The translations under genes were made by a program, and so were the position numbers. This document shows positions 5,857 through 29,902 of a stretch of 64,000 nucleotides of DNA, one piece after another (position 1 is the first letter of the stretch; every line of letters begins with the position of its first letter). The notes under the pieces were generated by a model that worked only from the letters and a program-made list of their open reading frames with translations, did no database searches and was not told the origin of the DNA. Location: the NCBI GenBank assembly GCA_037447605.1, contig CM074816.1, positions 1,007,873 to 1,071,872 of the forward strand, given 5' to 3'. This DNA comes from Zygnema circumcarinatum SAG 698-1b. Lineage: Eukaryota; Plantae; Zygnematophyceae.

Positions 5857-5880
5857 CGATTGCACGGATCAGAGGGGGAT

Positions 5881-6279
5881 TGTTGAGATCCGTACAATCG
5901 TACAGTGAGTCGTACGGAACGTTTGTTCGGATATTGTGTACGGAATTGTACGAGCTGCGTAACACGTGTTGAGTGCTTAGGAAGTAGTGTGAATCCCAAG
6001 ACCTTTGATCGTATGGTTTGTGTTGTTCATCATGTTATGCATTTTGGCGGCGAGGTTTTAGGAAGGACAGATATAAGACTCGTGTTTTGTGTGTCTTTGT
6101 TAACTTGAGCTTTGAGGAAAGCATAGGATGCTGAGCTCTTGTTAAGTTTTGGAATAAAGCTTTTGCGGATATATGTTCTACTCCTTGGATGCTTGAGATT
6201 GTTGAACATGTCTAAGAAAGGAAAGGCCCACAAAGCTGAGATGGATGATAGTGAGAGAGACAAAGGCTCCAGTTCTACA
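5881..6279 (+). repeat. 3' LTR of the copia element (399 bp)
   Basis: TG...CA ends, follows the PPT, homologous to 15951-16326 and 12757-13097. Confidence 0.9.
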
Positions 6280-6384
6280 AGGAGGAGGAAGGAACATGGA
6301 GTGTGGTGAAAGGGAGAATGGTGGAAGGGCGAAGGAAGAAGTTGAAGAGGGTGTTGAGGAAGGATGGAGGCTACTAACTAACAT

Positions 6385-6740
<356 letters not shown>

Positions 6741-6807
6741 GTCGGCCAGTCGTTCCGACGTCGTCGGAACGTCGTCGACGTCACCGTACCGGCACGAAAC
6801 GGCTCTA

Positions 6808-6850
6808 CAGTAGGGGGTCCTCATATTTTCCACCCTGGTTCCGGGCAAAA
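6808..6850 (+). mobile_element. Truncated left end of a TA-targeting MITE related to 12164-12750
   Basis: TA|CAGTAGGGGGTCCTCATATTTTCCACC resembles the TIR CAGTAGGACCCCGTCATATTTTCCACC. Confidence 0.6.
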
Positions 6851-7752
6851 TAGGGCGTGTCAGACTTAAAAAATTCTCGTAATACTAAAAACTCGATATT
6901 CGTAACATTTCGAGTCAACGTCAGTAAAACTAAAATTCCCGAGCCTAGTTTTTCGCACTCGCGGCGCGGTCCTGTTCGCACTCCGCGATCGCCGTCTTCG
7001 CACTTCTCCAAACGCCGTCTTCGCAACTTCGCCCTCGCGCGGGGCCCTCAGACTTAGAAACAGCGCCGGCGCGGCGCGCGGAGACCGCTTGTCGGTGTGT
7101 CGTGTTGCGCGTCACGTCGCTGCGCGCCGCCACCATCTCCTCCTCCTCCTCCTCCTCCTCCTCCTCCTTCTCCTCCTCCTCCTCCTCCTCCTCCTCCTCC
7201 TGCTGCTGCCGCCCCGACTTAAGCCGAGGGTCTTGTTCACGCTTGCCCGCTGTCCCTTGTCAGCGCCCAACTCGATCGGGCGAACAACTTCTTGTGGCCG
7301 CTTCCCAGTCCCCACACGCTCCCTTTGCTCCAGGTACTCCCGCCTGCCCCCCTGCTCCCTGTCCCTGTATGCCTGCCTACTTGCCCGCTTGCCGGCCTGC
7401 ACCCTTGCCTAGCTACCCCCCCTTGCCCGCTGCCCCCCCTCCCTGCCCCCTTGCCCCACTCCCTACCCCTTACCTTGCCCCCTTGCCCCACTCCCTACCC
7501 CTTACCTTGCCCCCTTGCCGGCCTGCCCCCTTTCCTATGTACCCCCCTTTGCCCGCTGCCCCATTCCGTGCCCCCTTGCCCCACTCCCTGCCCCCTTTTC
7601 CCACCGCCTGCCCCTTTCCTTGCCCCTTCCCCGCCCCCTTGCCGGCCTGCCCCCTTGTCTGCCTACCATCTTACTACCTTTTTTGTTTCCTTTTCTTTTT
7701 TTTTATCCTTTCCTGCAGCATTCAAAGCTGCATTCGAAACATTGCCATCATT

Positions 7753-11371: not shown

Positions 11372-11679
11372 CTGCAATTAACTCAGAACATTATTAAAAA
11401 AACCACAAAAAATGAAGTATTTCAGAAGTTAAAAGATAAATTTCAAGTGTACGACTCAACTCCCAGATGCAAAATAACCTTGAACCCAAAGAAAACGATC
11501 GCTAAAGATAACGCAGAAATAGTAGGGTCAATCAGACAAATCTGAGCAATTCTATACAATTTTTTCAGCAATTTTTATGAAGGTATTAAAGAACTTAATG
11601 AGATTTCAAGAGAAAGCAANNNNNNNNNNGGAAAGGCAAGGAAAGGCAAGGAAAGGAAAGGCAAGGAACGAGGGAGTAC

Positions 11680-12756: not shown

Positions 12757-15700
12757 AGTGTAGGAAACTGTACGGACATAGTCACGCGTGTCGAGTGTTT
12801 CGCAAGTGGTGCGAATCCCAAGACCCTTTGATCGTATGGTTCATCATGTTATGTTTTTGGCGGCGAGGTTTAGGAAGGACATGTATAAGACTACTGTTTT
12901 CTGTATCTTTGTCAACTGGACCTTTTGAGGGAAGCATAGGATGCTTGAGCTCTTTTTCTATTTTGGAATAAAGTTTTTGTGGATATATGTGTTGTTCCAT
13001 GTATGATTGAGACTCTTGAAAATGTCTAGGAAAGGAAAGGCTTCTAAAGATGAGATAAAAGATACTGAGAGAGAGAGAAATAGGGTCAAGTTCTACAAGT
13101 GGTATTAGAGCAGGACATGATGATATGGAAAAATATTCAGTCACTTTGTTTGATGGGACAAATTAACTTTCTTGGAGTCAAAACATGGAGGCAGTGTTCG
13201 AAGTGAAGGAGTTGATGGAGTTGGTGGATGGCACAAAAGCCATACCAGATGTAGAGAAAGAGCTCGAGTAGTTTGCAAATTGAAAGAAGAAAAACGATAA
13301 AGCAAAAGCTTTAATTCTCACTTCAATGAAAACCCTACATAGAATAGCACTTAGAGGATTAACAACGAAAAAAATATAGACAAAGCTCCTAAACATTTAC
13401 TCATAAAAAACGCAGCACATGGGATAGTAGCATATGTAGAGTTTACATCTATCAAGATGAGGGAGACAAAAACTCTAGATAACCACAATATCAGATTTGA
13501 CAGTGAATTGAAAATACTAACTGAAATCGACAAATCTATCTTAGAAAACGACTAGGCCTATATGTATCTTCAAGTGTAGGTAGCTGTTACACTTGTAATC
13601 GCCTTGGATATTCAGCAAAGAATTGCATGAGTAAAAGAATTGCAAATTCTGTTATCACTAAACAAAATAACGCCTATGCTATAAAATTTTGAGTTGCCCC
13701 AACAACTACCTCTCTATCAAAAAATCAGATTGGATTATAGATTGAGAGGCTAGTACTCACGTTATTTGGAAATGGAACACTCTCGGAGAACCCTTGATCC
13801 TTACATTGTAGAAGCTCACTATTTTTAATGTAGTCATTAAGCTGTCAAGAGCAATTTTTAAAACACACTTTTTTATACAACCTTTTTCCTTCCACTTTTT
13901 TCTCTGTCCCCCTTCTCACTCTCTTTAACACCGGCTCCATCTCTCTCCCCTTTCTCTCTTCTTCTTATGCATTTTGCTATTCGAGCAACGACCAAAGCAA
14001 GCAGCCCATAGTGAAACAGCTTACAAAAACAAAAAATAACATGCAAAAATTGGTCTCATACACAGTAATAGTTAGACAACGACATCCACAATAAAAAATT
14101 TGACATCGTTAATATAAAAATTGATATTCATTCAACAATGAATGTCAAGGAGCACAAAATTTACAAACTGCGAGTTTGGCTCACTTGTTGGACACAGTTT
14201 GACCTCTCTTTTAAGGTAAGCTGCACCCAATAATAAATCTTACCTTAAAAAAAAAAAAAATGTAACTTAAACCTTGAATCCTGACCAAATCTGACCTTGA
14301 CTCCAACCACCCACTGTGGACACCCGCGCGAGAGAGAGAGTCTCTCTCTTTTGACTTCCTCTACAACGAAGGACCAAAAGAAAAATTTCAAGAAAAAAAA
14401 AAAAAAAAAATATTTATTATCGCATTTCAACTCCACGACGACAAAGAGGAAGATTTCTCATGAGGAGTGCAGACTGCTACGACGGATCCAAAATGATTTG
14501 CTGTACAAGTAAAACAGAATTTTCTGTTAGAACTTATTGCTAAGGCAAGGATGTTAAAAAGCTGGAAAACAATCATGCATTCTTTTAGTAAAAGGAGACA
14601 ACAAACCAGCTCCAATCCTCTGCAATAGATAAAATTGCAACTCGACTAAAGAATGGAAGTCTTACTTGTTAGATTTGTTGCTTTGCACCTTTAATTCGCT
14701 CGCCTTGTTCACTTATCAAATGTGCCTTTCATTTTTTTGGGCTGGCATCCAAACGTGCTTATCTATTTTGTGGGCATTAACCACTATGGTGCGAAAAAGG
14801 CGTTGGGCAGGCAATCCATCATGAGCGGCGGCCATTGTGTCACTCTAAAAGAGGGCGAGAAATTCAGCACGGGCAGCGACAGTGGCGAGAACTCCTCAAT
14901 CTTACCTCCAACCGATACCTACACGGCCTAGCTATTTGTTGTAACCCTTAAAAAGGCAACTATAATTGTAGGTATTAGGCCATACAATTGGAGCCTAGAA
15001 TGAGAAGCTGGATGATGTATTTCAGAAAAATAGATATAGGCAATTACAAAAAAACTCTTTAGTTTACACCAAAGGAAAAAGAGAGAATTGGATCGTCATT
15101 GGAATCTATGTAGACGATCTCATCATTGTCAGTAATTCTATATCAAGTATTGCAACATTGAAGAAGATGCTTTCGCAGAATTTTAAAATGTCAGACATTG
15201 AAGAGGCAAAATTTCTACTCGGAATTCAGATTAAGAGAGGGCAAGATGGTAAGATCTTACTTACTCAAGAGTAGTATGCAAAAAATGTTTTGAAAAAGTT
15301 TCAACTACTGGATGCATGCCCATGTCCATCACCGATGGATCTTAGCATGAAGCTTTCAGCAAATGATTACCCCAAGAGTGTTCCATATCGACAGGCTATC
15401 GGGAGCTTAATGTACCTATGTAGAGGAGGCAGGGGTTCGTTACAACCTAACTACAGGCACTACTACCGACTACTAGTCGGTTCTTAAACAATCTTGAATA
15501 TGCACATTGGGAAGCAGGTAAAAGAATCTTTCGTTATGTGAAAGGGACAGGAGGGTATGGATTGTCGTTTAGTTTTAATGAGTCTACTCAGGTGTATGGT
15601 TACTCAGACGCTGATCGGGGAAGAGACGTTGATATTGGTAGGTTCACTTTAGGATATGTGTTTTTGTGTGGAGGTTGTATCACATGGAACTCAGAGTTAC

Positions 15701-16326
15701 AAGAGTCAGTAGCGCTGTTTAATACGGAGTCAGAGTACATGGTAGCATGTCATGTGACAAAGGAGGCTATTTGGCTCAAGATGTTCTTTCAAGAGTGTGA
15801 ATTTACATTTGCAGTTGCCTTTTAATAATAAAGCACTTAAGTGGGTACCAAGAGGTCCAAAGTTCGAACCCTGTTGATGACCGGGCTTATTATAGCACAT
15901 GTGTTCAATTGGTAGGAATGATGTAAAAAAAGCACACTCAAACAAGAATTTGTTGAGATCCATATAATCGGATCATAAAACTAGTGTACAAAATTGTACA
16001 GACGTATTCACACATGTCGAGTGTTTAGCAATTGGTGTGAATCCCACGACCCTTTGATCAAATGGTTCATATTGTTCATCATGTTATGCTTTTGGTAGCG
16101 AAGTTTAGGAAGGACATGTATAAGACTATTGTTTTTTGTGTCTTTGTCAACCAAAGCTTTGAGGGAAGCATAGGATTCTTGAGCTCTTGTTCTATTTTGG
16201 AATAAAGTTTTTGTAGATATAGTGCTATTCCATGTATGATTGAGACTCTTGAAAATGTCTACGAAAGGAAAGGCTTTTAAGGATGAGATAGAAGATACTA
16301 AGAGAGAAATAATTCCCAGTCCTACA
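12757..16326 (+). mobile_element. Degenerate, internally deleted copia of the same family as 2038-6279
   Basis: 5'-truncated LTR to 13097; PBS TGGTATTAGAGC 13100-13111; decayed gag to ~13600; decayed RT/RNase H ~14990-15930; 3' LTR 15951-16326. Confidence 0.85.
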
Positions 16327-16878
16327 TCGCCATCATGAGATCAATGCCATATCCATTGTACCTAAACCCTAAATCTCGAGGATCCTAAGGATTCTCGAGT
16401 AATCCTAAGGATTCCACCCAAGTTTGACGAGTACCACCCCCAGATACAGTCCATTGTGGCTGCCACAAATGGCTTCTTCTTGCATTCACTTTGTCACGCA
16501 TGCAAGGTTCAACTTGTCGTTCAAGGCGCCATTCCTTCCTACAGTGCTACATCTCAAACTGCGGATGAAAAGGCGGTTCGGAAAGAGCCTAACTCGCTGC
16601 ACCCCACCGACCCCAAAGTGGTCAAGTCAATGCAGAACCAGGTTCGCCATCCAAAAGGAAAAAAGTTAATCGTAGACCACTGAGCTCTAATATGCAATGA
16701 GTCGAGCACCTCTGATATGTCATGGGGGCCCGTGTGAATTGTCCTAGTATTTAAGGCTTATGTCCTGGCTGTGGTACCTTCCGCCAGGGTTCCCATAAAG
16801 ATAAATGTTCACCCATTGATACATTGCGCATGCAGATTAAAAATGAAGCTGGACGAGGTGTCTAAACAAATATCTTAC

Positions 16879-18259
16879 GTGGTGGTGGAGGACCTGGAGG
16901 TTTCTTTGGTGCTGGTGAGGAAGGACGAGGCAGTGGTGAAGGAGGAGGCCTTGGCGGTGAACGAGGGGGCTTTGGAGGTGGAGATGGTCGTGGCGGGGGT
17001 GAAGGTGGCCTTGGCGGAGATGGCGGAGGTCGTGGAGGTTTTGGTGGTGATGGAGGAGGCTTTGGAGGCCTCGGTGGTGAGGGTGGTTTTGGAGGTGAGG
17101 GCGGTGGCCGTGGCCGAGGACTTGGTGGAGGAGGAGGTGGTGGAGAAGGAGGGCTTGGGGATGGTGGTGGTGAAGGAGGAGGAGGAGGTCTTGGGGGTGG
17201 TGGTGGTGAAGGAGGAGGAGGAGGACTTGGGGATGGTGGTGGTGAAGGAGGAGGAGGAGGTCTTGGGGGTGGTGGTGGTGAAGGAGGAGGAGGAGGACTT
17301 GGGGATGGTGGTGGTGAAGGAGGAGGAGGAGGACTTGGGGGTGGTGGTGGTGAAGGAGGAGGAGGAGGACTTGGGGGGTGGTGAAGGAGGAGGAGGGTGG
17401 TGGTGAAGGAGGAGGAGGAGGACTTGGGGGTGGTGGTGGTGAAGGAGGAGGAGGACTTGGGGGTGGTGGTGGTGAAGGAGGAGGAGGAGGACTTGGGGGT
17501 GGTGGTGGTGAAGGAGGAGGAGGAGGATATGGTGGTGATGGTGGAGGTGAGGGTGGTGGTGGTCTTGGTGGGGGATGGGGAGGTCGTGGAGGCCTTGGTG
17601 GTGGACGAGGGGGCTTTGGAGGTGGAGATGGTCGTGGCGGGGGTGAAGGTGGCCTTGGCGGGGATGGCGGAGGTCTTGGAGGTTTTGGAGGAGATGGCGG
17701 AGGTCTTGGAGGTTTTGGAGGAGATGGCGGAGGTCGTGGAGGTTTTGGTGGAGATGGGGGCGGCCTTGGAGGCCTGGGAGGTTGAGGAGGTGCGGGTGGA
17801 GGTCGTGGGGGAGGACGAGGCGGAGGAGCTGGGGGTGGTGAAGGAGGGCGGGGCGCTGGTGGTGGTGCACGTGGGGGTGAAGGTCGTGGTGGTGGAGGTC
17901 TCGGAAGTGATGGTGGCAATGAGAACAGTGGAGCCGGCGGGAGTGACGGCGTAGGTGTCGTCGAGGGAGGCGAGTGGCTGATGGGTGGAGGGTTAGAAGG
18001 TGGGAGGCGCGGAGTTGATCTGGATGTATATGCCAAAGTGAATGAGGAAGAGGAGGTATAATCAAGAATACTGACATAGTCAGTGGCCGGTTTGCTTCCA
18101 TCGAGTGCAACATAAGTTGTCCATGCGTTGAATGGAAGAAGAATTTGTGTTCCATCAGCGCGGTAAACAGCTGACAAGGTCCATCTATTAGAAGGGAAGC
18201 CCACAGGTGACTTTAGCTTTATGTATTGCCATGTGCCATCGCCAACACTCAGATTGCCC
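16879..18259 (-). CDS. Exon 14: end of core plus second extensin-like Pro-rich rod
   Basis: GTWQYIKLKSP..LSAVYRADGTQILLPFNAWTT..SILDY followed by SP3-SP5 and PPRPPPSPPK repeats; strong donor C|GTAAGA at 16878; frame slip in the 33-nt repeat near 17380. Confidence 0.8.
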
Positions 18260-21200
18260 CTGAAAACAAGTGAACAGATGTCAAACATGGGGGTCAGCAA
18301 AACGCGAACAAATGCTCCACAACCAGCAAGTTTGACAAGGATTTGGATAAACTTTGAACTACCATACTAGTAATATAAATCACATCGGGCTTTCACATTC
18401 GTTAGCAACATAGATTCCTCAGTCAATCCTTATAAGTTGACAGGGATACATGGAAAGCCATGCGTCAAATTGTCAAGGCTTGAATAGCACCTGATGATAG
18501 ACACAACTTGGGTGTACGACGCGTCTCCCGGTCCAAGGATCGGACTCCCAAGTATGATATTGGTGGCTGAAACCGTGAAGACAGGTAGCACTACGTTGCC
18601 TTTACTGCTGTGGATCCTGTCGGGAATGAGATCAACATCCGGCACTTGATCCACCAGAAAGTCCGGGTATTCGTCGACGTTGCTTTCGTCCACCATCATA
18701 ACAACGTGAACAAGGTCAAACAAATCCACTGACTGCATTACCGACAATGAGGGCTCGCCCAGTGGGTTCACAGAGGAGAAGGTCGCATTCACGCCCACAA
18801 CTGACCCTGCAGGCTGCTCTGGATGAGCCACCGAACCTCGGTTGTACCAAGAGGAGGAATGTCGCCAACGGTCAATGCGAAGGCATTCTGAACTATCGAG
18901 TTCCCGAGGAGGGCGTCAACAATGGAGAAAGTCACAAGAAGACCCTTCTTGTTAGCGGTGATTGTTGGTTGAAGGGACTGGGCCTTTACTTGCTTTGCAA
19001 TTCCGGCACCGGAGTTGTATAGGAGGAGACCCAGAGTTGCAGGAACGGCAGGTTCCACCTGACATACCCGATTCGCGATTTAGTAATCAGAGCCCAAACA
19101 CTCTTTTCATAAGTCATCAAAGTAGTGAGCTCGTTAGCCCTACTTCAAGTCCATTTCATTTCCAAGATTCGGCACTATTAAAGAAATGACATAACAAATG
19201 TTGATCCACAATTCCACATGAGGATACACATCGCACTATAATACCATGAAAACGCTTCAATACTAATATCTCCTAAGGATAATCGAAATGAGATGATTTA
19301 CCAGTACTGAAACGAAAGAGGAGAGAGCGTGTTTGAATGTTACCTCGGAAGTAAAGGGATTGTCCCCAATGACAGTGCGCTCTATGAAGTACTTGAGCGA
19401 CAGTTGAGGCTTTGGCTCAACCGTTATCTGGACAGGCGTCAGAGAGTACTCCACAGCTGAATCTTGGTCAAAGCCTTCCACGTTGTATGACAGAGTTCCG
19501 CCTATGAAGTACGTTGTGGGTCCAACTGGAGCAGCTTCTGCACGCGCTGCAATCAGCCAGTCTGCAGATCCTGATGTCTCCCCGGAGAGTGTTCCTGTGA
19601 CAACATGCCAACATGCCAACACTTGAAAAGTCTATTCCAAGCCGAATCCTTCAGACTAAGCGGTGGAGTTATAGCTTTAGAGCCAGGTGTAAAATTATTT
19701 TTGTCATCGAAAGTGTTCAGCCTCTACTTTTCTAGCTTGGAAAGGAGGAAATGGGTCCAAGAAGTTCAACATCCTCTTATAAAACCCTGTTTGGCTATCT
19801 TTTGTATGGAGTATAATCCAAGAGATGTAGAAATTTTGGGGGCAATGATCCGAGAGAAGGATGAACCTGTTCCGTTGAGAGCCGTGATGCCCGTAAGCTC
19901 CAGCTTACCCACAACAAAGAGCCCATTCACATTGTTACCATCCGCGTCTGTGAATGAGAGGGTCACGGAGATCTGAATGAGCGCTTGCGGAGCGGAATTA
20001 GTCAGTTGGAGCTGAGCTTCAACCTGTTCATTAAGAAAAGGCAAAACAGGAAGCCCATCAATCGTCAGCTTAAAATAATTTTTGAGAAACCTCACCCCAA
20101 ATCTCTACATTTAACCATTCCCTCTTTAAGAGCTGGCTGAAAAGGAAGTACCGCTGCATCGGTGATGAAAATTGTCTGCTTGACGACCACTGAGACTTCC
20201 GCGCATGTTCCTGATTGGTCCTCCGACTCCACGAGCTCAAGAAACGCGTCCAGGAAGGCGTGAGAGGCCGTAAGATAACCTTGAGAACGGACTATCCGGG
20301 TATTGTTTAAAAAGCTTGCATACAACGATTGCACCTTCGCCACATTCATCGCTGGGTTTCCAGGCGTCACTGAAGCAGGGTTCCATCCTAAAGCACGTAA
20401 GAGTTACAGAGAGAACGTCGTTGAATTGGTTAGTTCCCAATCTCAACTTTTCTCCTTGTTTCTCTTGACTTTGGCCCGGCTATTTTGAACAAGAAACATA
20501 ATCTGCTCATGATCTCGCTGTCATTTTCAGACTGGTTTTTCCTCAAACATCATAGATCTAAACTTTCTAGAAAGTAGAGAGTGATCACAGACTAGATAGG
20601 GAAAATGCAAAATGGGTCGTAAGCCAGTGTCTCATGTGTGACTGTAGCCACGTATGTGAAAGCCGGAGCTTTTACAACGCCATACAAGAGGCACTCACCT
20701 CCATTCCATCTCTCAATGAATCGTCGTCGATAATTAACAGCCACATATGAGTCATACATTGCACTCTCAAGCTGAGTTTGCTCCATGGACGAGATAAGTA
20801 TGCCGCTTTCCGAGCTGTCCCCAACAAACGTGGTGAATAGAGCCGTCCAATTTTCGCTCACAGTGAAATCTTGAGTAGTGTTGAGCCACTCAGGGGCATC
20901 ATCTGCCCCAAAGTACTCGTCAAAAAGGTCGACCTCCACCTGTGCAAGGCCTGCACAGCGTTTCAAGAAGCAAAATCTTTAGTATTCGGCTCCTTCGCCG
21001 TTATCGTTTTCTCCTGAAAACGCAATAAATCGGATCGAATCCGTTTGTTCGGTTGCAATGCTTAGGCTAGAGTATGTTGATTTCTCTTTTCGCGAGGAAG
21101 GACGTCGACTCAAGATTTCACATTACACGCTAATACACTCCATTGCTGGCTTTATACTCGTGTCCATACGTTCATATTGTCTTTAGAATTTCACCCTGAA

Positions 21201-24200
21201 TTATCCAACTCTGCTAATTATACGTGGTTTCAACCACTAAAATAGGCAGGCCTCAAGCATTACGGCATCACAATTGCTTGCATCTGGCACATGTGGATCA
21301 ATCCTTCCACTTTTCCTTGGCATTCAAAACATGAGATTAAAGTCAAATCCCTTATGGGATCCATTATGGCATATGGGAGTTAAATTTAGGTTTAAGCGCT
21401 CGTTGCAGCAGTTGGCATGGCCCAGTAATACGAGCACATTTTGTGACAACTCTTGCATCTGGGAGTACAAGGTTGCCTGTGCACCTTGATAGTACTTCAC
21501 AACCTTCGCAGCCGGAGTGTTCAAGTCGACAAAGCCCCCAGAAGAAAGTTGAAGAAGCTTCCTTTGCGCACCGCTACCACTTGCGCCATTGTTTATGCCG
21601 GCGAAGAAGCAACTCACCAATCCTTTGGCAATGCACTTATAGAATAGGTTTGGAATCAAACTGACTACAGCCTCAACAACAACTTGATAGCAGTTAATAA
21701 CAAGTGTCCTGGAGGAAATCACTGGAGTGAATAAGTCGTCGCGGATTGAGTTTGAACAGCGCACGCTCTTGACGTTACTTGCAAGATTCGATGCGCCTTT
21801 CGCAACCTCTAAACCATTGTTGGCCTTAACCGGAATAAGTTTCTGAATGTATGTGATGACAAACTTGAATTGTCCAAAAACCATACATTTAGCAAATGCC
21901 TTGATGCCTGCGTCAATGCACTTGTTGCAGTTGAACGGAATGGTTGCCTGTTGAGGACAAAAAAAGAGGATTTAAAGAAGAATCGCAACATTAGTTTAGT
22001 GACGCCTGGCCAACTTGTTACGCAAATGGTAAACTTCAATTATTACTGCCCGTATGAAAGACACTAGAATATTTTTTTCACAATACAAGCTACCACTAAT
22101 ATACATGGATAAATGCTCTGTTAAAATTGAAACATAACATGAGTGCAAGCTTTCTAAATTTGAAGTACCTGAACAGGATATTCTTGTGCAGTTATCTCTC
22201 CCCCTCCTCCCTCTCCTCCCGTTCCTGAGAATGTGGAGGGCTGTAACGGGCAGGCCTTGGCACCAACTACTGTGAAAGTTATGTCACAAATTATTCCATC
22301 GCATGGGTAGCACCACCGCACTCTGATGGCAACCACATTGCATGTTCCAGTGCTGCAGAAAAAAGACAATGTTCACAAAAGCATTTATGAGTCAATTTTC
22401 ACATTCTAATGTCACAACAAAGGGAAGCCTTGAACTAAAAAGAGCGAAGGACGTGGTAAAACTATTGAAGCCATCGTGGAACTTCAAAATTCAAGAGATT
22501 AGGGCCTGACTTTAACATCAATACCATAAAAACGATGCAGCCTTTCTCTGAAATATTGTTCGTTTGAGCACAGGGACAAAGCGAGAGAGGGAGAGAGAAT
22601 GAGGGTGGGGGGAGGGGAATAAGATTACCTGGTGGAAGATGCGCGAGACACAGAACTCAAGTGTGGGGCCTTAAGCCTTGCCACTACTGGAATGAGCACA
22701 CTGGTCAATGCCGGCAGTACGTCAATCATTGTGTTGACTTCCGGTATGAATTCAAAGTTGGGGTCATCGCTCGGTAGTACCAATTCCGTGGCCAGAGCTG
22801 CGATCAAGCGAAAAAAAAAAAAAAAAATTGCCAGAAATAACAAGGGAAAGTGTATTTAAAAACTTCCTGTCCTCAAGCGAGATCAACAACAGTCGGCCTG
22901 AATAAAGATCGCATGGACGGCCTCAATACACCCTTCTTCCTTTGCCATGGCAATGGTTAGTTAAGGCAGGGTGATGTCGCACCTGCAATGAGTCCCACGT
23001 TTGTAATGTTGTACACAATCCTTTGGGTCGCCACCAGATCATCGTATGAAATGTAACTTGGCTCTACAATCACAACAGGAGCTGGAACTCTGCACAATCC
23101 ATGTCACCAAATAGTTAGAATGAAACATTTTTTCTGACACTGTTGACAAAGGACAGGATGGTCCACATCCAATAACAACAGTCTTTAGGATTTGGCATTT
23201 CCCGGACAAAAGATTGTTTTGGCCGGCACTGAGCTAAGGGAAAAAAGGAAAACACCTGGTAGAGAAGACCAAAGTGAGCTCCACACTGTTCACCTCCTCA
23301 AAGCTTGTCGGCACAACAGTGAAGGCCACCGTCACAAGGTCACGCTTTAAGAAGAGAGAAATGATTTGAGGTGTCCCATCCGCATACTTTAACTGCATAG
23401 TCATCCAGCTCAAGGTAAAGAAGTTGGGCACTTGAGAAAGAACGCTGGGCAAGACTCAATCACCTATTATAACCTTCGATGGCAATGAAAGAAGCAAAAT
23501 ACAACAGGTAAAGGTGCAGGAAGCGGAGGTCCATACCTTTGTACCTATTCTGTGTTTTGGGGCTGAGCCTTTGATCGTGTACAAGCCTTCTACAAGTCCA
23601 GCGAACGTGACCGTTCCATTTGAAGGCGATACTTTGCTGGAAATAACAGCACCTTCAGTATCGAAAAGTGTGACAGTTGCACCTTCCAACAAAGGTGATC
23701 CGGGAGCAAAAAATGTGTACTCGTCTTGAACTTGCACAACAAAAGATGAAGTTCCAAGAGTTGAGTTGGTCACGACGACAATCTGAATAGGAACTTGAAG
23801 AGATTGGATACCCGACCCCACTGAGAGAAACGTAGAGATGGTGAGACCTGGTTGGGCATCGATTGGGACTGCTCCAAGCAAAGTCACAGATGTCACCCCT
23901 CCGGGTGGAATTGGCGGAAGCGGAGAAGGAGTAGCGAGTGAAATGAATGAGCCAGAAGAGTCGATGGAGAGAGGAATGACAGTTGATGTTTGTACCACGT
24001 CCGTATTGGAAATTGAGACAGTGAAGGTAACAACTGCTCCCGGAAGTGACGTTCTGGACAAGGTAGATGGTGAAGCTTGCAATTTTGTGGAGGCTACTTC
24101 AGCTTTCACAAGGAAGGAAAAAGAGTTTTTGGCTCCTTCAGTGCATGTGACGTTGAAAGTTGCCACTTGAAGGCCAGAAGTAGCAGAAGCTTGGTTGGCA

Positions 24201-27200
24201 ATAAAGTCAACACTGACATCGGCTGCGTCTCCTGCAGCTAACGAAGTTGCAGTGATTGAAGCTGAGGCAAGAATTCCCGAACCGGAAGGCAGTGTCATGA
24301 CTACATTAATTCCATTAAGTGGAGATGCGCCGGTGTTAGTTATGGTGGCAAAGGATGATAAGCTGGTGGTGGTGCCAGATGGGATAGTGAAAGTGAGGCC
24401 CTGCTGAGTTGGTTGCACAGCTGCTGAAATAAGTGTAGCAGACAAGCCCAATATATTGAAGGAGTCCTGCGGTGAACTATCTATAGATGGATAGCTGACG
24501 TCACTCGGATGCCGAGAAAACACATAGAACATGCCCGCCTCCGTTTGAATTGGGTCATATGTTGCCTGAAAACTACCGACTGCATCCGAAGTAGACGCTA
24601 AGATAATGGTTTTCACTTGATTGTTGAGGCCGGCCAAGACAATGCTAACATTCGAACCAACAGGGACTGAAGTAAGGGGAGGACTTGGAGTCGTTCTTCC
24701 GACAAAGGAGATGCGCTGAACATAAGGGAATACTCGCTTTCCACCACTCAATTGGACAGTAGCCGTGTATGGAAGAGGCACCAAGATCTGCCAATTATAT
24801 ACATCCGTTCCCGCAACATTGGCTGCTACAAGCTCAATAGAAACAGCCTGATCCGTTGTGGCTGCGGCCATCCAAGAGATAACGCCTGTCGTACTATTGA
24901 TCACCATCCCAAGAGGAGGGTTGATAAGTCTCCATTCAATAGGAGCAGTTCCACTTTGAACCCTTGGAAAGACTGTGTACGATGTGCCCGCATATACTAT
25001 GACTGTGTCGTCCTCTGCTGGCAGCCCCACACTGGAGATAACTGGAGGAGACAACTCCACACTACAATTCGAGCCATAGAAATATGTTCGACAGAGGCAA
25101 ATGCCTGCACTGCAAGTACCTAAGCTAGAGCATGGAGGGCTCCCAGGACATGGGCCGTAGTATCTTAGAAGACCAGGGGCAAAAACTTGAACGGCTCGTC
25201 CTAGAAACATGGCGGATATTCCAAGGGTGACAGTGGATTCGGGAGTATTGCTTGGAACTGTGCAAAAAAGAGAATCGGAAGAAATGAATGTGGCTTGGTT
25301 TCGGGCTACTCCATTGATGAGACAAGTGTAGGAGGTCCTTGGGTCGAAATCGCTACCTAGGAGTGTTATGGTTCCACCTCCAGTGCCGATAGAGGGAGGC
25401 GTGAAGCTGGAAACAAGGAACTGGCGTGGAGGTGGAGGAGGAAATGGGGGAGGACTCGGAGGAGGATTGGGAGATGGTGGTGGAGATGGAGGGGGTGAAG
25501 GGAAAGGTGGAGGTGTGGGAGGGGGAGGTGGTCTCGGAGGAGAGGGAGGGGGAGGTGGTCTCGGAGGAGGGGGAGAGGGAGGGGGTCTCGGAGGAGAGGG
25601 AGAGGGAGGTGGTCTTGGAGGAGCGGGAGAGGGATGTGGTCTCGGAGGAGAGGGAGAGGGAGGTGGTCTCGGAGGAGAGGGAGAGGGAGGTGGTCTTGGA
25701 GGCGAGGGAGAGGGAGGTGGTCTTGGAGGAGGTGGAGAGGAAGGTGGTCTGAGAGGTGGCGGAAGTGGCGGCGATTGCGGAGGCGGTTGACTTGGCGGCG
25801 GTTTTGCAGGTGTGGAAACTGCACAGAGAAAACTGCAACAATGTAAATGTGCAGACAAGCTGAAAACTTCAAACTGCCAAGTTTCAAAAGGTTCGGTTCA
25901 TGCAATAAGGGGTTTTGATCAATATAGTTATGGTGATAATCCTTAGCAAAATCTCCTTGGTGGAAATATGACGTTCTATGTTATACATCTGAGCAAGAAA
26001 AAACTCTGCCACTGTTATACATTTGATCGAAGGTATGGCGCACGTCCACGATATACTAGGTTTCAAGATACTTAACTTCGTTGTTAGACGAAGTCTATTG
26101 TGACTTGACCTGCGGAAGAGACTGTATGACATGCATACAATACTAAAGTAGTTCTAATTTCAAATGATTTTGCAGGGAGTAGGTATCAGGGTTGAAGGAC
26201 AGAATGGGGGAATGTAGTGTTAGATATAGGGATAGTGCGTGGACGGGCTGGCAGGACCGTAGACGTGACGGCGGCGAGCCCACCGCACATTATAACCTCT
26301 TCTTAAATTCCTTTTTGTTCCAGTCGGTTAAGCATAGAGTTTGACGCCCAACAGCAGAATTACACAACATAAACTAAGTTTTATAGGAAACGATGATTGT
26401 GATAGCTGACAATCATGCAAAACGAGGTGTGGACAGGAGAATATATATGATTCATTTGATTATCTTTTTAAGAACAAAGAAAAACCTGCATTTTTTCTTG
26501 TTCAGGGTTTCCGCAGCTTTATCAGCGGGGCAGCAAGCAGGGCGCTTCCTTTTGCCTTTACATTTGTAACGATGGTCGCAACCACTCGCTATCCAGAACT
26601 TTAAATGCATTACTGTCCATCTCTCAGAATTCGATCATCTCGCTTCCGTGCGACCGAGCAACCGGTAAAAGTGAGGGAAATTCTATTTGAAAGACTTAGG
26701 ACATTCCTATGTATGATTCCTACATCATGCAGAGCGGGCAAATGCACCCTCACGGCACGCATGAAGGTACAAAAGTTTGGCAACGCACCCATCCAGCTGC
26801 TCTCAAAGCTCCACGATAAAATCTGATGAGCATCAATGCAAGCCCCCGTTGCGGCTGTAAATCCAACAAAGGCCGAGGCTATACGGGAACAGTCCGCGCA
26901 GGTGGGTGGCCGAAGGATGCGGCAGAGGGACTTGGAATAATAACGGAGAACAGGCTGAACAGGTTTGCTATTCGCGTCGCTGAAGAATATGGACCACTGG
27001 CTGGTTTTGCTTTTGTATTCCACCCATGCATACTTCGTCGAGGTTTCCGACAAGTCGTCGAGGATGGACGTAATTGCGGATGCAATGGTCGTGGGGTTCA
27101 TGTCCTCAAGTATTCCAACATTTCTTCCATTAGGATCACTGTACTCAGAATTGACGTAAGTGTCGAATTTAACGGCTATGGAACCAACTGTGGCCGATCC

Positions 27201-29902
27201 TCCGTAGGAGTACCCGAGACCTCCCCCCGCGACTGCCCCAATTTCGCTCAAGTCCGCGTTGGAAGAAACAAGGGTGAAAGTAAGGCCATCCCCATCACAG
27301 CCTTGCATGTTGTTAAATATGAGAAACGAGAACGTCGCATTAAAAGAAGCTGCTTCGCAACCTCCAGTTCCGTTTTTGAGCAAGGTCATCGGAGCCGGAT
27401 GGAATGCATTGCCAGACTGGTAACTGCTGTAAGCCGTCAGCTGCAGCCTGTTGCCGACGACTTCTGTATTGCCTTGCATGATGGGAGGATTGCTGGTATT
27501 GAAATTGACATAGTTGAAGGCCGTCGGAGTAGCAAGTGCTGCATAAACTCAAAAAAATGAGTATCAGAAATAAGTGGAAGAGCAAAGAATCTGTTGTGTA
27601 ACTGGCAAAATTGCGAGGATAGAACAGAAATAATCGACTGGTGGACGAACTTTCTGTTGGTGGAATTCGCAACTCAGAGACTGGCATCAAAAACTCAACA
27701 TCACACAAAATTCCAAATAGCACCTTGTGTCCCATCCGATATTTTCCCTTTACTTCCCAAAGCCCTAACCCGTACAATCACAAAGAGGAGTCTCCCACTT
27801 CCCGTTCACCTTAGATTCACGAAAGCAAGTCTTTCAGCCAATCTTTGATGGCTGGACCAGCTTTTTTGCATCCTTTTTGGTTCCCGAATGCGACGATGCA
27901 GATGCCAAATATACTTTCCAATGCTCCAATTTTCCATGCAATTTTTTTCCTGCACGTGCAGCTGTTCTTTTATTCTATATAATGGATTGCTCTCTAAGAG
28001 CCTCCGCAGCTTCCTCTGCGGAACAGGAGGCAGGGCGCCTCCTTCTGCTTTGTATTTGTAACGTCTGTGAATGTACTCGCTTCAGAACTCCTTTAGATGC
28101 TCATCGCAGTTCTGAACCTCCGGGAAAACCCTAAACGTCCTAATGACCCTAAGAACTCCAAATTTGCAGAAGAAAGTACCGGTGGAGGACTAGCATCGAG
28201 CGGAGAGGAGAGCTCTGAATTGGGGGGGGCGGAGGGAGAGCTGCCACTTGGCAGCAGCGCAGAGAGCGACCCTGAAAACCCTTATATATTTCAAATCTGG
28301 GAGAGTTCTAAATCGAAGTAGGAGAGGACTCCGTCATGCCTCGAGGGAGGGAGAGTGGGAGGAGAGGAAAAGGGAGTTCTTACGGCACTTAAAACCGTAT
28401 ATGAAAATGTGATGTATGGATTAATGATGCCAGAAAGAGCATCCGGGTTCTTACATAGTCAGACCTGCAGCTATGCGTTCCGTAGGCACTCCTTGAGTCA
28501 GCTGTGGAAACCCTAAACACGAAAAAAAAAATAGGTGATCCTGCAAACCCTCAAAATCTGCAGAAGCTGGCACAGCTGTCATTAAGCGGAGACGGAATCT
28601 CTGAACATTGGGGAAAAGGTAGAGTTGCCACCCTGGCAGCTGCAGAAATACCCTGATGCTCATTACAGTTCTGAACATGCCGAATACTGAATGAAGAATT
28701 CTAACAATTGGAAATCCCTAAAAGGACAGGCTCTGAGAATTGCAATGCCGCCTCGGCAGCTGCAGCAGCCTCTTCTCCCGCTCTCGAAGCACAGAGAGGG
28801 GTCGGGCGAGGAGGGAGCAGAGCGCATTTGTCATGAAGCGTATTCTGGAGCGGTATTTTAACAGATTCGATAATCATCTCGCACGGAGAGGCTATTGGAT
28901 GTTCCCTCATATTCTGCAATCTTCACCACCTTTTAACCCCTCTGCAGAACCAACAGGAGGTGGGAGGACTGGCATCAATAGGAGAGGAGAGTTCTAACCA
29001 GGAAAGTAGACGTACAGCTGAAACTTGGGATGCGCAGATGGAGACCCTCAGAACCCTAATTTACCTTGAAAGGAAATTTCTACAAATATGGAAGATTCAA
29101 AGAAGTTGGTAAAACCCGAAAATTAGAAGAAAGGCAAGGCTCTGCAACGCATGGCTTCTGCAATGCAACGCTACAACAGCTCCCTCTCCTGCTGCTAAAG
29201 CAGGGAGTGAGGTCGGTCGCGAAGGGAGTGACAGGGTGAGGAAGGGCAAGAGGGAGGAGAGGAAAGGATGCTCTTGCAACTCCTCATGCGATGCATGTAA
29301 TGATTGCGAGAAGTCGCCGGATGCTGTCATAGTCGGAAGCAAGGCTATGCTTTCCTTCGGAACTCTAGCGTCGACTACGTGCTCGCAGCTCCATGAAATG
29401 GTGGAATTTAAAGGCGCTCCCTCTTTCAGTCAGTGGACCAGCTCGTCCTCCAAAAGCTCGCCTTTTTTCTCAGGGACTGAAAGTGGCTCCATGAAGGACT
29501 TTCGAACGGATTCTTTACTAACGCATATTCTGGATCGGAATTTCTAAAACGGGAGTCGAGAAACGTCTGAGGATTAGAGAGAGATTCCGATAAATATGTA
29601 AAACAACAAAGGAACACGGAAAAAACTCGTAACAGAAAGATGACGAGCCAGCTGAAGCATTGTCCTTCACACACCATTTACTTATACGACTGTGCACAAG
29701 ATCGACTGTCCATGGTAGTCTGATGATGTAATTCCATGCTTTTGCGATAAAAGCGACGAGCGAGCGTACAAGACATCACACGCAACTCTTCGTTACCTTG
29801 TGACAAAGGCGGAGGGCCGGACGGGACCATGTCCGCAAGTGCGAGCGCGGCCAGGTGGAGGGCCGCGAGCAGCAGCGCGAGAAGGGAGGGAGGGGAAGCC
29901 AT
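16879..29902 (-). CDS. Giant secreted multidomain protein (~2,300 aa, at least 14 exons): signal peptide, L-type lectin, Pro-rich rod, IPT/TIG, EGF, Ig-like repeats, uncharacterised core, Pro-rich rod
   Basis: Manual model with all GT-AG junctions phase-compatible: 29902-29797, 27538-26789, 25818-23537, 23392-23256, 23089-22983, 22797-22629, 22352-22169, 21947-21485, 20950-20699, 20387-20152, 20023-19867, 19594-19344, 19058-18491, 18259-16879. Two apparent indels (~18806, ~17380). Terminal exon unresolved. Confidence 0.82.
18491..20950 (-). CDS. Exons 9-13: conserved core
   Basis: ESGILIS..RRFIERWN; GTCAEVSVVVKQ; VEAQLQLTN; GETSGSADWL..PTTYFIGGTLSY; GDNPFTSEVEPAVP; VRWLIQSSLQG; NPLGEPSLS; DEYPDFLVD. 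One base is missing at 18805-18807. Confidence 0.85.
21485..22352 (-). CDS. Exons 7-8 (22352-22169, 21947-21485): Cys-rich segment
   Basis: WCYPCDGIIC...ATIPFNCNKCIDAGIKAFAKC...RKLLQ. The exon-8 donor position is the least certain junction. Confidence 0.75.
22629..23392 (-). CDS. Exons 4-6 (23392-23256, 23089-22983, 22797-22629): start of the conserved core
   Basis: Spliced translation LFLKRDLVTVAFTVVPTSFEEVNSVELTLVFST-RVPAPVVIVEP...ITNVGLIA-ALATELVLPSDDPNFEF reads continuously. Exon 5 is not in the ORF track. Confidence 0.85.
23537..25818 (-). CDS. Exon 3: Pro-rich rod, IPT/TIG, EGF-like, putative-Ig, further Ig/CARDB-like and carboxypeptidase-regulatory-like folds
   Basis: PPRPPPSPS repeats; VSSFTPPSIGTGGGTITLLGSDF; CPGSPPCSSLGTCSAGICLCRTYFYGSNC; GTAPIEWRLINPPLGMVINSTTGVISW; QDEYTFFAPGSPLLEGATVTL. 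Confidence 0.88.
26789..27538 (-). CDS. Exon 2: legume (L-type) lectin domain
   Basis: AFNYVNF..MQGNTEVVGNRLQLT, SFNATFSF, GDGLTF, GGGLGY, IAVKFDTYVNSEYSDPNGRNVGI, AWVEY, AFVGFTAATG, HQILSWSF; tatgcag| acceptor and G|GTGCGT donor. Confidence 0.9.
29797..29902 (-). CDS. Exon 1: signal peptide
   Basis: MASPPSLLALLLAALHLAALALA/DMVPSGPPPLSQ then G|GTAACG. The phase-1 donor matches the lectin-exon acceptor. Confidence 0.7.

What the first reader, a model, noticed from the sequence alone, without database searches (positions are those of the whole stretch)
16879..29902. Giant lectin-extensin-adhesin chimera
Seen: one spliceable frame joins a signal peptide, a legume lectin, an SP/PPRP rod, IPT-EGF-Ig repeats, a ~900-aa core and a second Pro rod. 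No transmembrane or kinase segment is visible. Established: plant L-type lectin domains usually occur as soluble lectins or on receptor kinases, and SP3-5 rods are hydroxylated, glycosylated wall modules. Inference: a very large wall or mucilage protein presenting a carbohydrate-binding head on a rigid stalk (adhesion, mating or microbe capture). I do not recognise this architecture.
Basis: partly seen in the sequence, partly recalled or inferred. Interest (0 to 1): 0.85.

Follow-up and report, generated by a model that had tools for sequence, protein, structure and literature searches.

The report
Secreted lectin-headed, proline-rod algal wall protein
This is a real, expressed gene for a roughly 2,300-residue secreted protein that puts a legume-type sugar-binding head and two stiff proline-rich rods onto a large extracellular module of unknown function, which bacteria, marine animals, a choanoflagellate and green algae also carry with other heads.

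Summary
The described gene exists on the minus strand (29902 to about 16862), with 14 exons and 13 introns.

**Splicing.** So the signal peptide, lectin and first Pro rod belong to one transcript.

**Domains.** The lectin exon matches Pfam Lectin_legB (E 1.4e-32). It keeps the sugar triad and Ca2+ ligands but has lost two Mn2+ ligands.

**Main correction.** "IPT-EGF-Ig repeats" plus "~900-aa core" are one conserved module of about 1,750 aa, not loose domains. It is colinear with a large unannotated family found in Planctomycetota, Saccoglossus, molluscs, Monosiga and volvocine algae. No Pfam family, no PDB sequence hit and no clear fold match cover its helical centre. Relatives carry other heads (SRCR, VOMI, WSC, F5/8C, Laminin_G_3). 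Volvocine members share the order head, Pro linker, TIG/EGF, module, and two end in a Pro-rich or Pro/Ser/Gln-rich tail. None of about 195 relatives carries a legume lectin.

**Caveats.** The window has a 1-nt frame break near 18800 and another in the second rod near 17390. These are probably assembly indels. Function is inferred only.

The same stretch was noted once more by this scan (s1-321719). I rate it a new variant of a known kind, of moderate interest.

The parts
29797..29902 (-). Exon 1: start codon at 29902 and the N-terminal signal peptide (about 23 hydrophobic residues)
   Evidence: It is the only hydrophobic segment in the model (KD 1.99). The donor at 29797 is joined to 27538 in RNA contigs of X2, X3 and X4.
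26789..27538 (-). Exon 2: complete L-type (legume) lectin domain
   Evidence: Pfam Lectin_legB E 1.4e-32. It aligns end to end with peanut lectin, PHA-E and Bowringia lectin. Both flanking junctions are seen in RNA.
25400..25818 (-). Start of exon 3: first Pro rod, about 140 aa, with PPRPPPSPS-type units
   Evidence: 62% Pro. A 27-nt tandem repeat x9 at 25509-25750 has no indels. The acceptor at 25818 is seen in RNA.
25226..25414 (-). IPT/TIG domain
   Evidence: Pfam TIG E 1.6e-5, 25.2 bits against a cutoff of 20.9.
25046..25150 (-). EGF-like (teneurin-type) domain
   Evidence: The Pfam hits here are weak (EGF_TEN 0.0038, EGF_Teneurin 0.019). The same position is an above-cutoff EGF_Teneurin in the algal relatives P0127 and P0148.
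24770..25054 (-). He_PIG-like Ig domain, where the part shared with bacterial relatives begins
   Evidence: tblastn aligns many He_PIG repeats of P0001, P0003 and P0005 here, with E down to 5e-11.
23537..24769 (-). Rest of exon 3: CARDB/NPCBM_assoc-like Ig domains and a CarboxypepD_reg/prealbumin-like domain (about 23540-23689)
   Evidence: Pfam gives weak hits. The stretch is colinear with relatives over 480-620 aa. It lies in one uninterrupted ORF with the rod.
23256..23392 (-). Exon 4 (core)
   Evidence: Core HMM positions 80-121, E 1.8e-8. In-phase GT..AG sites.
22983..23089 (-). Exon 5 (core)
   Evidence: Core HMM positions 121-157, E 9.5e-10. Splice sites.
22629..22797 (-). Exon 6 (core)
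   Evidence: Core HMM positions 155-204, E 7e-6. Only one in-phase splice pair exists on its 5' side.
22169..22352 (-). Exon 7 (Cys-rich part of the core)
   Evidence: Core HMM positions 215-274, a weak match at E 0.019. Splice sites.
21572..21947 (-). Exon 8 (Cys-rich or helical part). Its 3' end is the least certain boundary in the model.
   Evidence: Core HMM positions 279-375, E 0.0044. Several donors are possible. The full model still gives one unbroken HMM domain.
20699..20950 (-). Exon 9 (helical domain)
   Evidence: Core HMM positions 401-475, E 1.6e-8. The donor is GAG|GTGAGT.
20152..20369 (-). Exon 10 (end of the helical domain, with the conserved motif GxCAxV..xQ). The acceptor could be 20369, 20351 or 20387.
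   Evidence: Core HMM positions 499-567, E 1.7e-5. Consensus from A1.
19867..20023 (-). Exon 11 (Ig-like array)
   Evidence: Core HMM positions 569-621, E 2.4e-11.
19344..19594 (-). Exon 12 (Ig-like array)
   Evidence: Core HMM positions 619-700, E 6e-31.
18491..19058 (-). Exon 13 (Ig-like array). It contains a 1-nt frame break at 18799/18800.
   Evidence: Core HMM positions 699-786 (E 8e-31) and 787-864 (E 1e-22) lie in two frames that abut with no gap. Relatives run straight across the break. No DNA or RNA run holds more than 5 of 9 sampled words here.
18010..18259 (-). Exon 14, first part: the last conserved domain of the core (motif NAWT..Y)
   Evidence: Core HMM positions 885-963, E 3e-13. 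The same motif ends the module in P0127, P0148 and P0061.
16865..18009 (-). Exon 14, second part: second Pro rod, about 370 aa if read as Pro-rich throughout. There is a frame change near 17390 and a stop codon at 16864-16862.
   Evidence: Three-frame read. A 36-nt repeat x11.8 has 7% indels, and a 22-nt period lies at 17363-17418.
28941..28941 (-). Alternative acceptor inside intron 1, giving a non-productive isoform
   Evidence: The joint 29797>28941 appears in X4 only. Read in phase, it stops after 11 codons (sequence).

Best explanation
**What it is.** A single expressed gene encodes a secreted, non-membrane glycoprotein of about 2,300 aa. Its order is: signal peptide, L-type lectin head, Pro rod of about 140 aa, TIG, EGF, He_PIG/CARDB-like Ig domains, CarboxypepD_reg-like domain, Cys-rich segment, helical domain with no recognised fold, array of four or more DUF11/CARDB-like Ig domains, and a C-terminal Pro rod of about 370 aa.

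**Shown here.**
- The domain order.
- Two RNA-verified junctions.
- Membership of the globular part in a large conserved family.
- Absence of any TM segment or kinase.

**Inferred mechanism.**
- The SP3-5/PPRP rods are hydroxylated and O-glycosylated in the secretory pathway and adopt stiff polyproline-II shafts. At 0.31 nm per residue these would be about 40 nm and about 110 nm long.
- The C-terminal rod takes the place that a transmembrane anchor has in the animal and choanoflagellate relatives. It holds the protein in the wall or mucilage network.
- The N-terminal rod holds the lectin head away from the globular module, so the head can bind a glycan in a Ca2+-dependent way.
- The protein therefore works as a glycan-directed cross-linker or adhesin of the extracellular matrix.

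**How it arose.** It is one more case of swapping the recognition head on a conserved chassis. Relatives carry SRCR, VOMI, WSC, F5/8C or Laminin_G_3 heads.
For: - **Splicing:** joints 29797>27538 and 26789>25818 appear in three runs, with exon depth 50-350 against intron depth 2-16. Exons 1-3 read in frame.
- **Lectin:** Pfam Lectin_legB E 1.4e-32. The peanut-lectin positions D83, G104, N127, D123, Y125 and D132 are kept.
- **One ORF:** a single 2.3-kb ORF holds the first rod, TIG, EGF, the Ig domains and the CarboxypepD_reg-like domain.
- **Family match:** the spliced model matches a 39-sequence family HMM as one domain, positions 3-785, E 1e-166. The remainder matches positions 790-963, E 2e-39.
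- **Family size and range:** 780 relatives at E<1e-3, from bacteria, animals, Monosiga and volvocine algae.
- **Heads of relatives:**
- **Anchors:** animal relatives end in a TM segment and algal ones do not. Astrephomene P0127 ends in a Pro-rich tail directly after the same NAWxxY motif.
- **Fold:** Ig arrays like those of DUF11/CARDB/OmcB surface proteins, with no enzyme fold.
- **3' expression:** exon 13 words are present in runs of the RNA study P2.
Against: - No direct evidence exists for secretion, hydroxylation, wall location or sugar binding.
- Two of the four Mn2+ ligands of classical legume lectins are replaced (E121->K, H137->N), which could weaken or abolish the canonical site.
- The window has a frame break near 18800 and another near 17390. 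If they are real, the product would end after about 1,752 aa and lack the last Ig domains and the second rod.
- Eleven of the 13 junctions rest on homology and consensus sites, not on reads. Exon boundaries at 21572 and 20369 are uncertain.
- The rods contain almost no Tyr, so extensin-type covalent cross-linking is not predicted.
Confidence: 0.6

Rival explanations
1. It is an extracellular pattern-recognition or scavenger protein, an immune-like or chemosensory surveillance molecule. The lectin head captures foreign (microbial) glycans rather than the alga's own wall polymers. The conserved module is the effector or aggregating part.
For: Heads on relatives are classic recognition domains: SRCR x10 plus VOMI (C. 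incerta), WSC x3 (Monosiga), F5/8C (Mya) and SRCR (Haliotis). SRCR/CTL proteins of Chlamydomonas have been proposed to act in immunity or chemoreception (PMC8226300). Solanaceous lectin-extensin chimeras are linked to defence (PMC8012813).
Against: There is no signalling part (no TM, no kinase) and no lytic or enzymatic fold in the module. Nothing here separates self from non-self ligands.
Confidence: 0.15
2. It is a gamete or cell-cell agglutinin that works like the Chlamydomonas sexual agglutinins, which are fibrous HRGPs with globular heads on a long shaft.
For: The overall design is a globular head, a Hyp-type shaft and a large globular domain, with no membrane anchor. The shaft lengths are of the same order as those I recall for the Chlamydomonas agglutinin fibrils, a comparison not checked here.
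Against: Homology to SAG1/SAD1 was not tested. Transcripts are abundant in several ordinary RNA runs from three or more studies, which does not suggest gamete-restricted expression, although the conditions of those runs are unknown.
Confidence: 0.08
3. It is a decaying or truncated gene. The frame breaks at about 18800 and about 17390 are real, so the product is a protein of about 1,750 aa that lacks the last Ig domains and the second rod, or the transcript is degraded.
For: The window sequence as given has both breaks. A non-productive splice variant, 29797>28941, exists.
Against: - Downstream of the break the sequence is still strongly conserved and free of stops in the new frame (E 1e-22 and 3e-13).
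- Around 18800 every one of 15 short-read data sets, DNA and RNA alike, lacks 4 of 9 sampled words while holding the rest. That pattern is expected if the assembly, not the organism, carries the indel.
- The other break lies in a 36-nt tandem repeat of G/C runs, where assemblies often err.
- The window also has an N gap, so it is draft sequence.
Confidence: 0.12
4. The lectin domain is a non-binding structural or protein-binding module, as in many lectin receptor kinases. The protein is then simply a structural matrix HRGP.
For: The Mn2+ ligands E121 and H137 are replaced. Identity to any known lectin is at most about 31%.
Against: The sugar triad (Asp, Gly, Asn) and all Ca2+ ligands are kept across that divergence, which argues for selection on the site.
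Confidence: 0.2

Closest known systems
Unannotated TIG-EGF-Ig-CarboxypepD_reg-core proteins of volvocine algae (C. incerta HXX76_013351 and paralogues, Edaphochlamys HYH03_008867, Astrephomene Agub_g4033, Volvox VOLCADRAFT_106956)
   Same: They have the same conserved module, 27-35% identical and colinear over about 1,700 aa. The order is the same: head, Pro-rich linker, TIG/EGF, module. None has a TM segment. The Astrephomene protein ends in a Pro-rich tail and the Edaphochlamys one in a Pro/Ser/Gln-rich tail.
   Different: Their heads are SRCR x10 plus VOMI, or unknown, and none is a legume lectin. Their linkers are about 30 aa, not 140 aa. All are 'hypothetical', with no known function.
Animal, choanoflagellate and bacterial members of the same module family (Saccoglossus LOC100371179, Haliotis, Mya 'WIF1-like', Monosiga MONBRDRAFT_24936, Planctomycetota/Verrucomicrobia MAG proteins)
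   Same: The module is the same, from He_PIG (or TIG-EGF in eukaryotes) through the Ig array. The N-terminal recognition heads vary.
   Different: Several animal and choanoflagellate members end in a TM segment, and Saccoglossus has three tandem copies of the module. Bacterial members lack TIG-EGF and have many He_PIG repeats. None has Pro rods.
Solanaceous chimeric lectins (potato and tomato lectin)
   Same: A carbohydrate-binding domain is fused to a heavily glycosylated extensin-like Ser-Hyp rod in a secreted protein, classed as an 'other chimeric extensin' (PMC8012813).
   Different: Those use hevein (chitin-binding) domains, are small, and have no large Ig/helical module. They are not homologous to the lectin head here.
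L-type lectins of land plants: soluble legume lectins and L-type lectin receptor kinases
   Same: The lectin fold and family are the same. The nearest Atlas clusters are streptophyte legume lectins.
   Different: The known partners of the domain are nothing at all, a TM segment plus kinase, or a PEP-CTERM anchor in bacteria. Here there is no TM segment or kinase, the domain sits on an HRGP rod, and the Mn2+ site is degenerate.
Chlamydomonas sexual agglutinins SAG1/SAD1 and other algal fibrous HRGPs (from my own knowledge, not tested)
   Same: It works like them in design: globular domains carried on a long Hyp-rich shaft, exposed on the cell surface or in the wall.
   Different: Sequence relationship was not tested here. 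The agglutinins are not known to carry an L-type lectin.

Membership tests
L-type (legume) lectin domain, Pfam PF00139 | Full-length match to the family profile above the curated cutoff | tested here: met
   113.6 bits against a cutoff of 26.3, E 1.4e-32, profile positions 20-237 of 250. 98 PDB lectins match at E<1e-3.
L-type (legume) lectin domain, Pfam PF00139 | Monosaccharide-binding triad Asp/Gly/Asn (peanut lectin D83, G104, N127) | tested here: met
   All three positions are identical in the HMMER alignment to 1bzw/1ciw.
L-type (legume) lectin domain, Pfam PF00139 | Ca2+ ligands (D123, Y125, N127, D132) | tested here: met
   All are kept.
L-type (legume) lectin domain, Pfam PF00139 | Transition-metal (Mn2+) ligands (E121, D123, D132, H137) | tested here: not met
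   E121 is Lys and H137 is Asn. D123 and D132 are kept.
L-type (legume) lectin domain, Pfam PF00139 | Actual carbohydrate binding | not testable with these tools
   This needs recombinant protein and a glycan array.
Extensin / HRGP (chimeric extensin class) | Signal peptide plus repeated SP3-5 motifs | tested here: met
   There is an N-terminal hydrophobic segment. SPPP, SPPPP and SPPPPP runs are abundant in both rods.
Extensin / HRGP (chimeric extensin class) | Tyr cross-linking motifs (YXY, VYK) | tested here: not met
   Read by eye, only one Tyr occurs in the rods and no YXY is visible.
Extensin / HRGP (chimeric extensin class) | Pro hydroxylation and Hyp O-arabinosylation | not testable with these tools
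   This is biochemical. The review notes that glycosylation of chimeric extensin domains is rarely validated (PMC8012813).
Unannotated He_PIG-CARDB-CarboxypepD_reg-helical-Ig-array module family | Colinear match over the whole module to family members | tested here: met
   One HMM domain covers positions 3-785 (E 1e-166) and a second covers 790-963 (E 2e-39) of 1,094 positions. The upstream 640 aa match at E 3e-93 to 1e-15 against 150 or more proteins.
Unannotated He_PIG-CARDB-CarboxypepD_reg-helical-Ig-array module family | Conserved signature motifs (GVCAxVRxxIxQ, SSLQG, DFLV, NAWxT) | tested here: met
   Ours reads GTCAEVSVVVKQ, SSLQG, DFLV and NAWTT.
L-type lectin receptor kinase | Transmembrane helix and cytoplasmic kinase domain | tested here: not met
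   No hydrophobic segment follows the signal peptide. There is no kinase Pfam hit. The 5 kb downstream holds no ORFs of 70 aa or more other than short unassigned ones and a copia-like fragment.
Chlamydomonas sexual agglutinins | Sequence homology to SAG1/SAD1 and gamete-specific expression | not tested
The resemblance is in design only.

The most novel reading that the evidence does not exclude
The roughly 1,750-aa TIG-EGF-Ig-helical-Ig module is an ancient, still unrecognised extracellular 'chassis' shared by bacteria, choanoflagellates, marine animals and green algae. Lineages swap glycan-recognition heads onto it. Its confidently modelled helical domain has no detectable counterpart among solved structures. 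In this alga, the plant-type L-lectin (the ectodomain type that land plants put on receptor kinases) works from within the wall on an HRGP stalk. That would be a kinase-independent, matrix-based way of reading glycans.
Probability: 0.3. Interest if true: 0.7.

Novelty: new variant of a known kind. Interest (0 to 1): 0.5.

Why it matters
- **Lectin context.** If the lectin head binds sugar, this places an L-type lectin in a third context, besides soluble lectins and receptor kinases: tethered on a glycoprotein rod inside an algal extracellular matrix.
- **A neglected family.** The finding draws attention to a large conserved extracellular module with hundreds of members and no Pfam family for its core. 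No member seen here is annotated with a function (not all 780 were checked). Its fixed body and exchangeable recognition heads suggest a general adhesion or recognition role.
- **An experimental handle.** The alga's version has a head of a well-understood lectin family, so it offers an unusually tractable entry point. A defined ligand for the head would give the first functional handle on the whole family.
- **Practical use.** The gene model and the two frame breaks are of direct use to whoever annotates this genome.

Tried and rejected
- **Codon-usage exon scoring**, trained on the confirmed exons, was too weak to define exons. I replaced it with a family HMM run against all open segments.
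- **Atlas search with the 186-aa ORF at 21327-21884** gave only scores of 0.41 or lower.
- **Sequence searches of the core:** Pfam and PDB sequence searches found nothing beyond flanking Ig or CarboxypepD_reg domains.
- **Fold searches of the core model** (PDB, AFDB Swiss-Prot, AFDB clusters, Atlas) gave only generic Ig arrays and unnamed clusters.
- **An alpha-2-macroglobulin or thioester-protein reading** was considered because of MG-like hits and a conserved Cys...Gln motif. I dropped it. A separate model of the Cys-rich and helical region (pLDDT >90 over about 165 aa) found no alpha/alpha-toroid or any other match (Foldseek best E 0.3; VIA best Z 7.3, all generic helical hairpins). There is also no CGEQ motif.
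- **A nested gene or repeat in intron 1** was considered. There is no repeat elsewhere in the window, no Rfam family and no convincing ORF.
- **Homologue search:** the first long-region search timed out. A shorter region worked.
- **The 18800 break as an intron** was rejected, because homology is continuous with no residues missing.

Full report
**1. What is in the sequence**

All long open segments that look like protein lie on the minus strand between 29902 and about 16860.

- An ATG at 29902 opens a hydrophobic N-terminus. In the final model this is the only segment with a 19-residue Kyte-Doolittle mean above 1.8.
- The ORF at 27479-26610 is a complete legume lectin domain: Pfam Lectin_legB, E 1.4e-32, 113.6 bits against a cutoff of 26.3.
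- The 800-codon ORF at 25858-23456 starts with about 140 residues that are 62% Pro. It continues with a TIG domain (E 1.6e-5, above cutoff), a weak EGF, Ig-like stretches and a CarboxypepD_reg/prealbumin-like domain.

**2. Transcript evidence**

The contigs are spliced, so these are RNA data.

| Joint | Ends on minus strand | Depth X2 | Depth X3 | Depth X4 |
|---|---|---|---|---|
| 26789>25818 | GT..AG | 218 | 143 | 34 |
| 29797>27538 | GT..AG | 88 | 44 | 24 |

- Exons are covered 50-350 deep and introns 2-16 deep.
- Joining exons 1-3 at these sites gives one frame: signal peptide, lectin, Pro rod.
- An extra joint, 29797>28941, appears in X4 only. Read in phase it stops after 11 codons, so it is a non-productive variant.

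**3. The 'IPT-EGF-Ig repeats' and the 'core' are one conserved module**

A full HMMER scan with the 641 non-Pro residues of exon 3 found 780 proteins at E<1e-3, none above 41% identity.

- The best are giant proteins: Planctomycetota and other MAG proteins, Saccoglossus LOC100371179, Mya, Haliotis, Halocaridina, Monosiga MONBRDRAFT_24936, and the volvocine algae Astrephomene, Edaphochlamys and C. incerta.
- tblastn of these proteins against the window hits not only exon 3 but a colinear series down to about 18020.
- An HMM of 39 relatives (1,094 positions) hits 13 open segments in strict order.
- At each gap there are in-phase GT..AG sites, mostly CAG|GT...(Y)nCAG| like the two confirmed introns.
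- Exons 1-13a translate to 1,749 residues without a stop. They match the HMM as a single domain, positions 3-785, E 1e-166. The rest matches positions 790-963, E 2e-39.
- Eukaryotic relatives align from the TIG-EGF onward. Bacterial relatives align from the He_PIG domain onward.

**4. Frame breaks**

*Break at 18799/18800.* The frame changes by one base while the alignment to every relative continues with three to five relative residues between the aligned ends (P0127 1708 to 1712, P0061 3864 to 3869, P0001 3058 to 3063). An intron cannot do this.

A 121-nt probe centred on the site found 15 DNA and RNA data sets of the same species that hold words from it. None holds more than 5 of the 9 sampled words. 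That is the pattern expected if one central position of the window differs from all reads. I therefore think an assembly indel is more likely (about two in three) than a real lesion, but I could not look at reads there.

*Break near 17390.* A second frame change lies in a 36-nt tandem array with 7% indels and a local 22-nt period. Read as Pro-rich throughout, the rod has about 370 residues and ends at 16865.

The window also contains an N gap near 11620, so it is draft sequence.

**5. No anchor and no kinase**

There is no hydrophobic segment after the signal peptide and no hydrophobic C-terminal tail. The 5 kb downstream is AT-rich, with only short ORFs and a copia-like fragment on the other strand.

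**6. What the module looks like**

- AlphaFold on the family alignment (mean pLDDT 72) gives N-terminal beta domains, a poorly modelled Cys-rich stretch, a helical domain, and about 410 residues of beta-sandwiches at pLDDT above 90.
- Fold searches return only Ig arrays (DUF11/CARDB, chlamydial OmcB, TRAPPC11/13, integrin-alpha legs) and unnamed AFDB and Atlas clusters.
- A separate model of the Cys-rich plus helical part has about 165 residues at pLDDT above 90. It finds nothing in the PDB (Foldseek best E 0.3; VIA best Z 7.3, on generic helical hairpins).
- Pfam and PDB sequence searches with the family profile are empty for this part.
- The module is therefore an uncharacterised, non-enzymatic-looking surface module.

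**7. The pattern across relatives**

| Protein | Head or N-terminal part | C-terminal end |
|---|---|---|
| C. incerta P0148 | SRCR x10 + VOMI, then a ~30-aa Pro linker | no TM |
| Edaphochlamys P0061 | SRCR per its UniRef name (no Pfam scan run here), then a Pro linker | Pro/Ser/Gln-rich tail, no TM |
| Astrephomene P0127 (partial) | unknown | SPPPP-type tail right after the NAWxxY motif |
| Monosiga P0051 | WSC x3 | fn3, then TM |
| Mya P0038 | F5/8C + beta-helix | no TM found |
| Haliotis P0045 | SRCR + beta-helix | TM |
| Several bacterial members | Laminin_G_3 (precomputed Pfam PF13385) | variable |
| This gene | L-type lectin, then a ~140-aa Pro rod | ~370-aa Pro rod |

- The family has a fixed body and an exchangeable recognition head.
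- In algae a Pro-rich tail sits where several animal and choanoflagellate members have a membrane anchor.
- No legume lectin occurs in the 154 + 44 relatives examined.
- In the large Atlas clusters the only partners of the lectin domain are none at all, a kinase, or a bacterial PEP-CTERM anchor.

**8. The lectin head**

- Aligned to peanut lectin, it keeps D83, G104 and N127 (the sugar triad) and D123, Y125, N127 and D132 (the Ca2+ ligands).
- It has Lys for E121 and Asn for H137, two of the four Mn2+ ligands.
- Its nearest relatives are only about 31% identical. Its language-model neighbours are streptophyte legume lectins.
- Sugar binding is likely but not assured.

**9. Mechanism and rivals**

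Best reading (confidence 0.6): a secreted HRGP-type matrix protein.

- The C-terminal rod embeds it in the wall or mucilage network.
- The N-terminal rod presents a Ca2+-dependent lectin head.
- The whole acts as a glycan-directed cross-linker or adhesin.

The domain order, splicing and family membership are shown. Hydroxylation, rod geometry (0.31 nm per residue, from general knowledge of polyproline II), location and ligand are inferred.

The rivals are microbe recognition, a mating agglutinin, a truncated or decaying gene, and a non-binding lectin. They are set out in their own section.

**10. Novelty**

- Lectin-on-extensin chimeras exist in Solanaceae, with hevein domains (PMC8012813).
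- The head, linker, module, tail order exists in volvocine algae.
- New here are the legume-lectin head on this module and the very long rods.
- Other first-stage notes suggest that extensin-linked chimeras are frequent in this genome (untested). That lowers the surprise of the fusion as such.
- The more interesting object is the conserved module family itself.
- Verdict: a real feature, a new variant of a known kind, interest about 0.5.

Noticed in passing
window 27970-28965 (inside intron 1 of the gene): This stretch is transcribed at depth 35-125 in the RNA runs, although it lies in a confirmed intron. The joint 29797>28941 (X4 only) leads into it and gives an early stop. There is also a minor joint 27736>27538 with non-canonical ends. 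No repeat, Rfam family or convincing ORF explains it.
   Followed up: partly
window about 20200 (exon 10); alignment A1 near position 570 of P0001:2252-3399: A nearly invariant motif, GVCAxVRxxIxQ (here GTCAEVSVVVKQ), opens the Ig array of the family. Its invariant Cys may pair with another invariant Cys about 280 residues upstream in the Cys-rich segment. Its role (disulfide or reactive site) is unknown.
   Followed up: no
window 15538-15825 (+): A short ORF resembles, by eye, the C-terminal part of a copia-type polyprotein (...ESEYMVACHVTKEAIWLK...). It is probably a degraded retroelement in the AT-rich stretch downstream of the gene. No search was run on it.
   Followed up: no
window about 11620-11630: A run of N (X in the translations) marks an assembly gap. 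The window is draft sequence, which bears on how much weight to give single-base frame breaks.
   Followed up: no
window 24080-24680 and 27245-27370: RNA contigs differ from the window at clusters of positions, about 2% over some exon stretches, and the same variants recur in X2, X3 and X4. The sequenced RNA probably comes from another strain or haplotype than the assembly.
   Followed up: no
window 30341 onward: According to another first-stage note, a Gypsy element begins only about 440 bp upstream of this gene's start codon. It could therefore contribute to or constrain the promoter.
   Followed up: no
P0002 (Saccoglossus kowalevskii LOC100371179, 7,485 aa): This protein contains three tandem copies of the whole module (about 2431-3823, 4143-5485 and 5752-7028) and ends in a hydrophobic segment.
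   Followed up: partly
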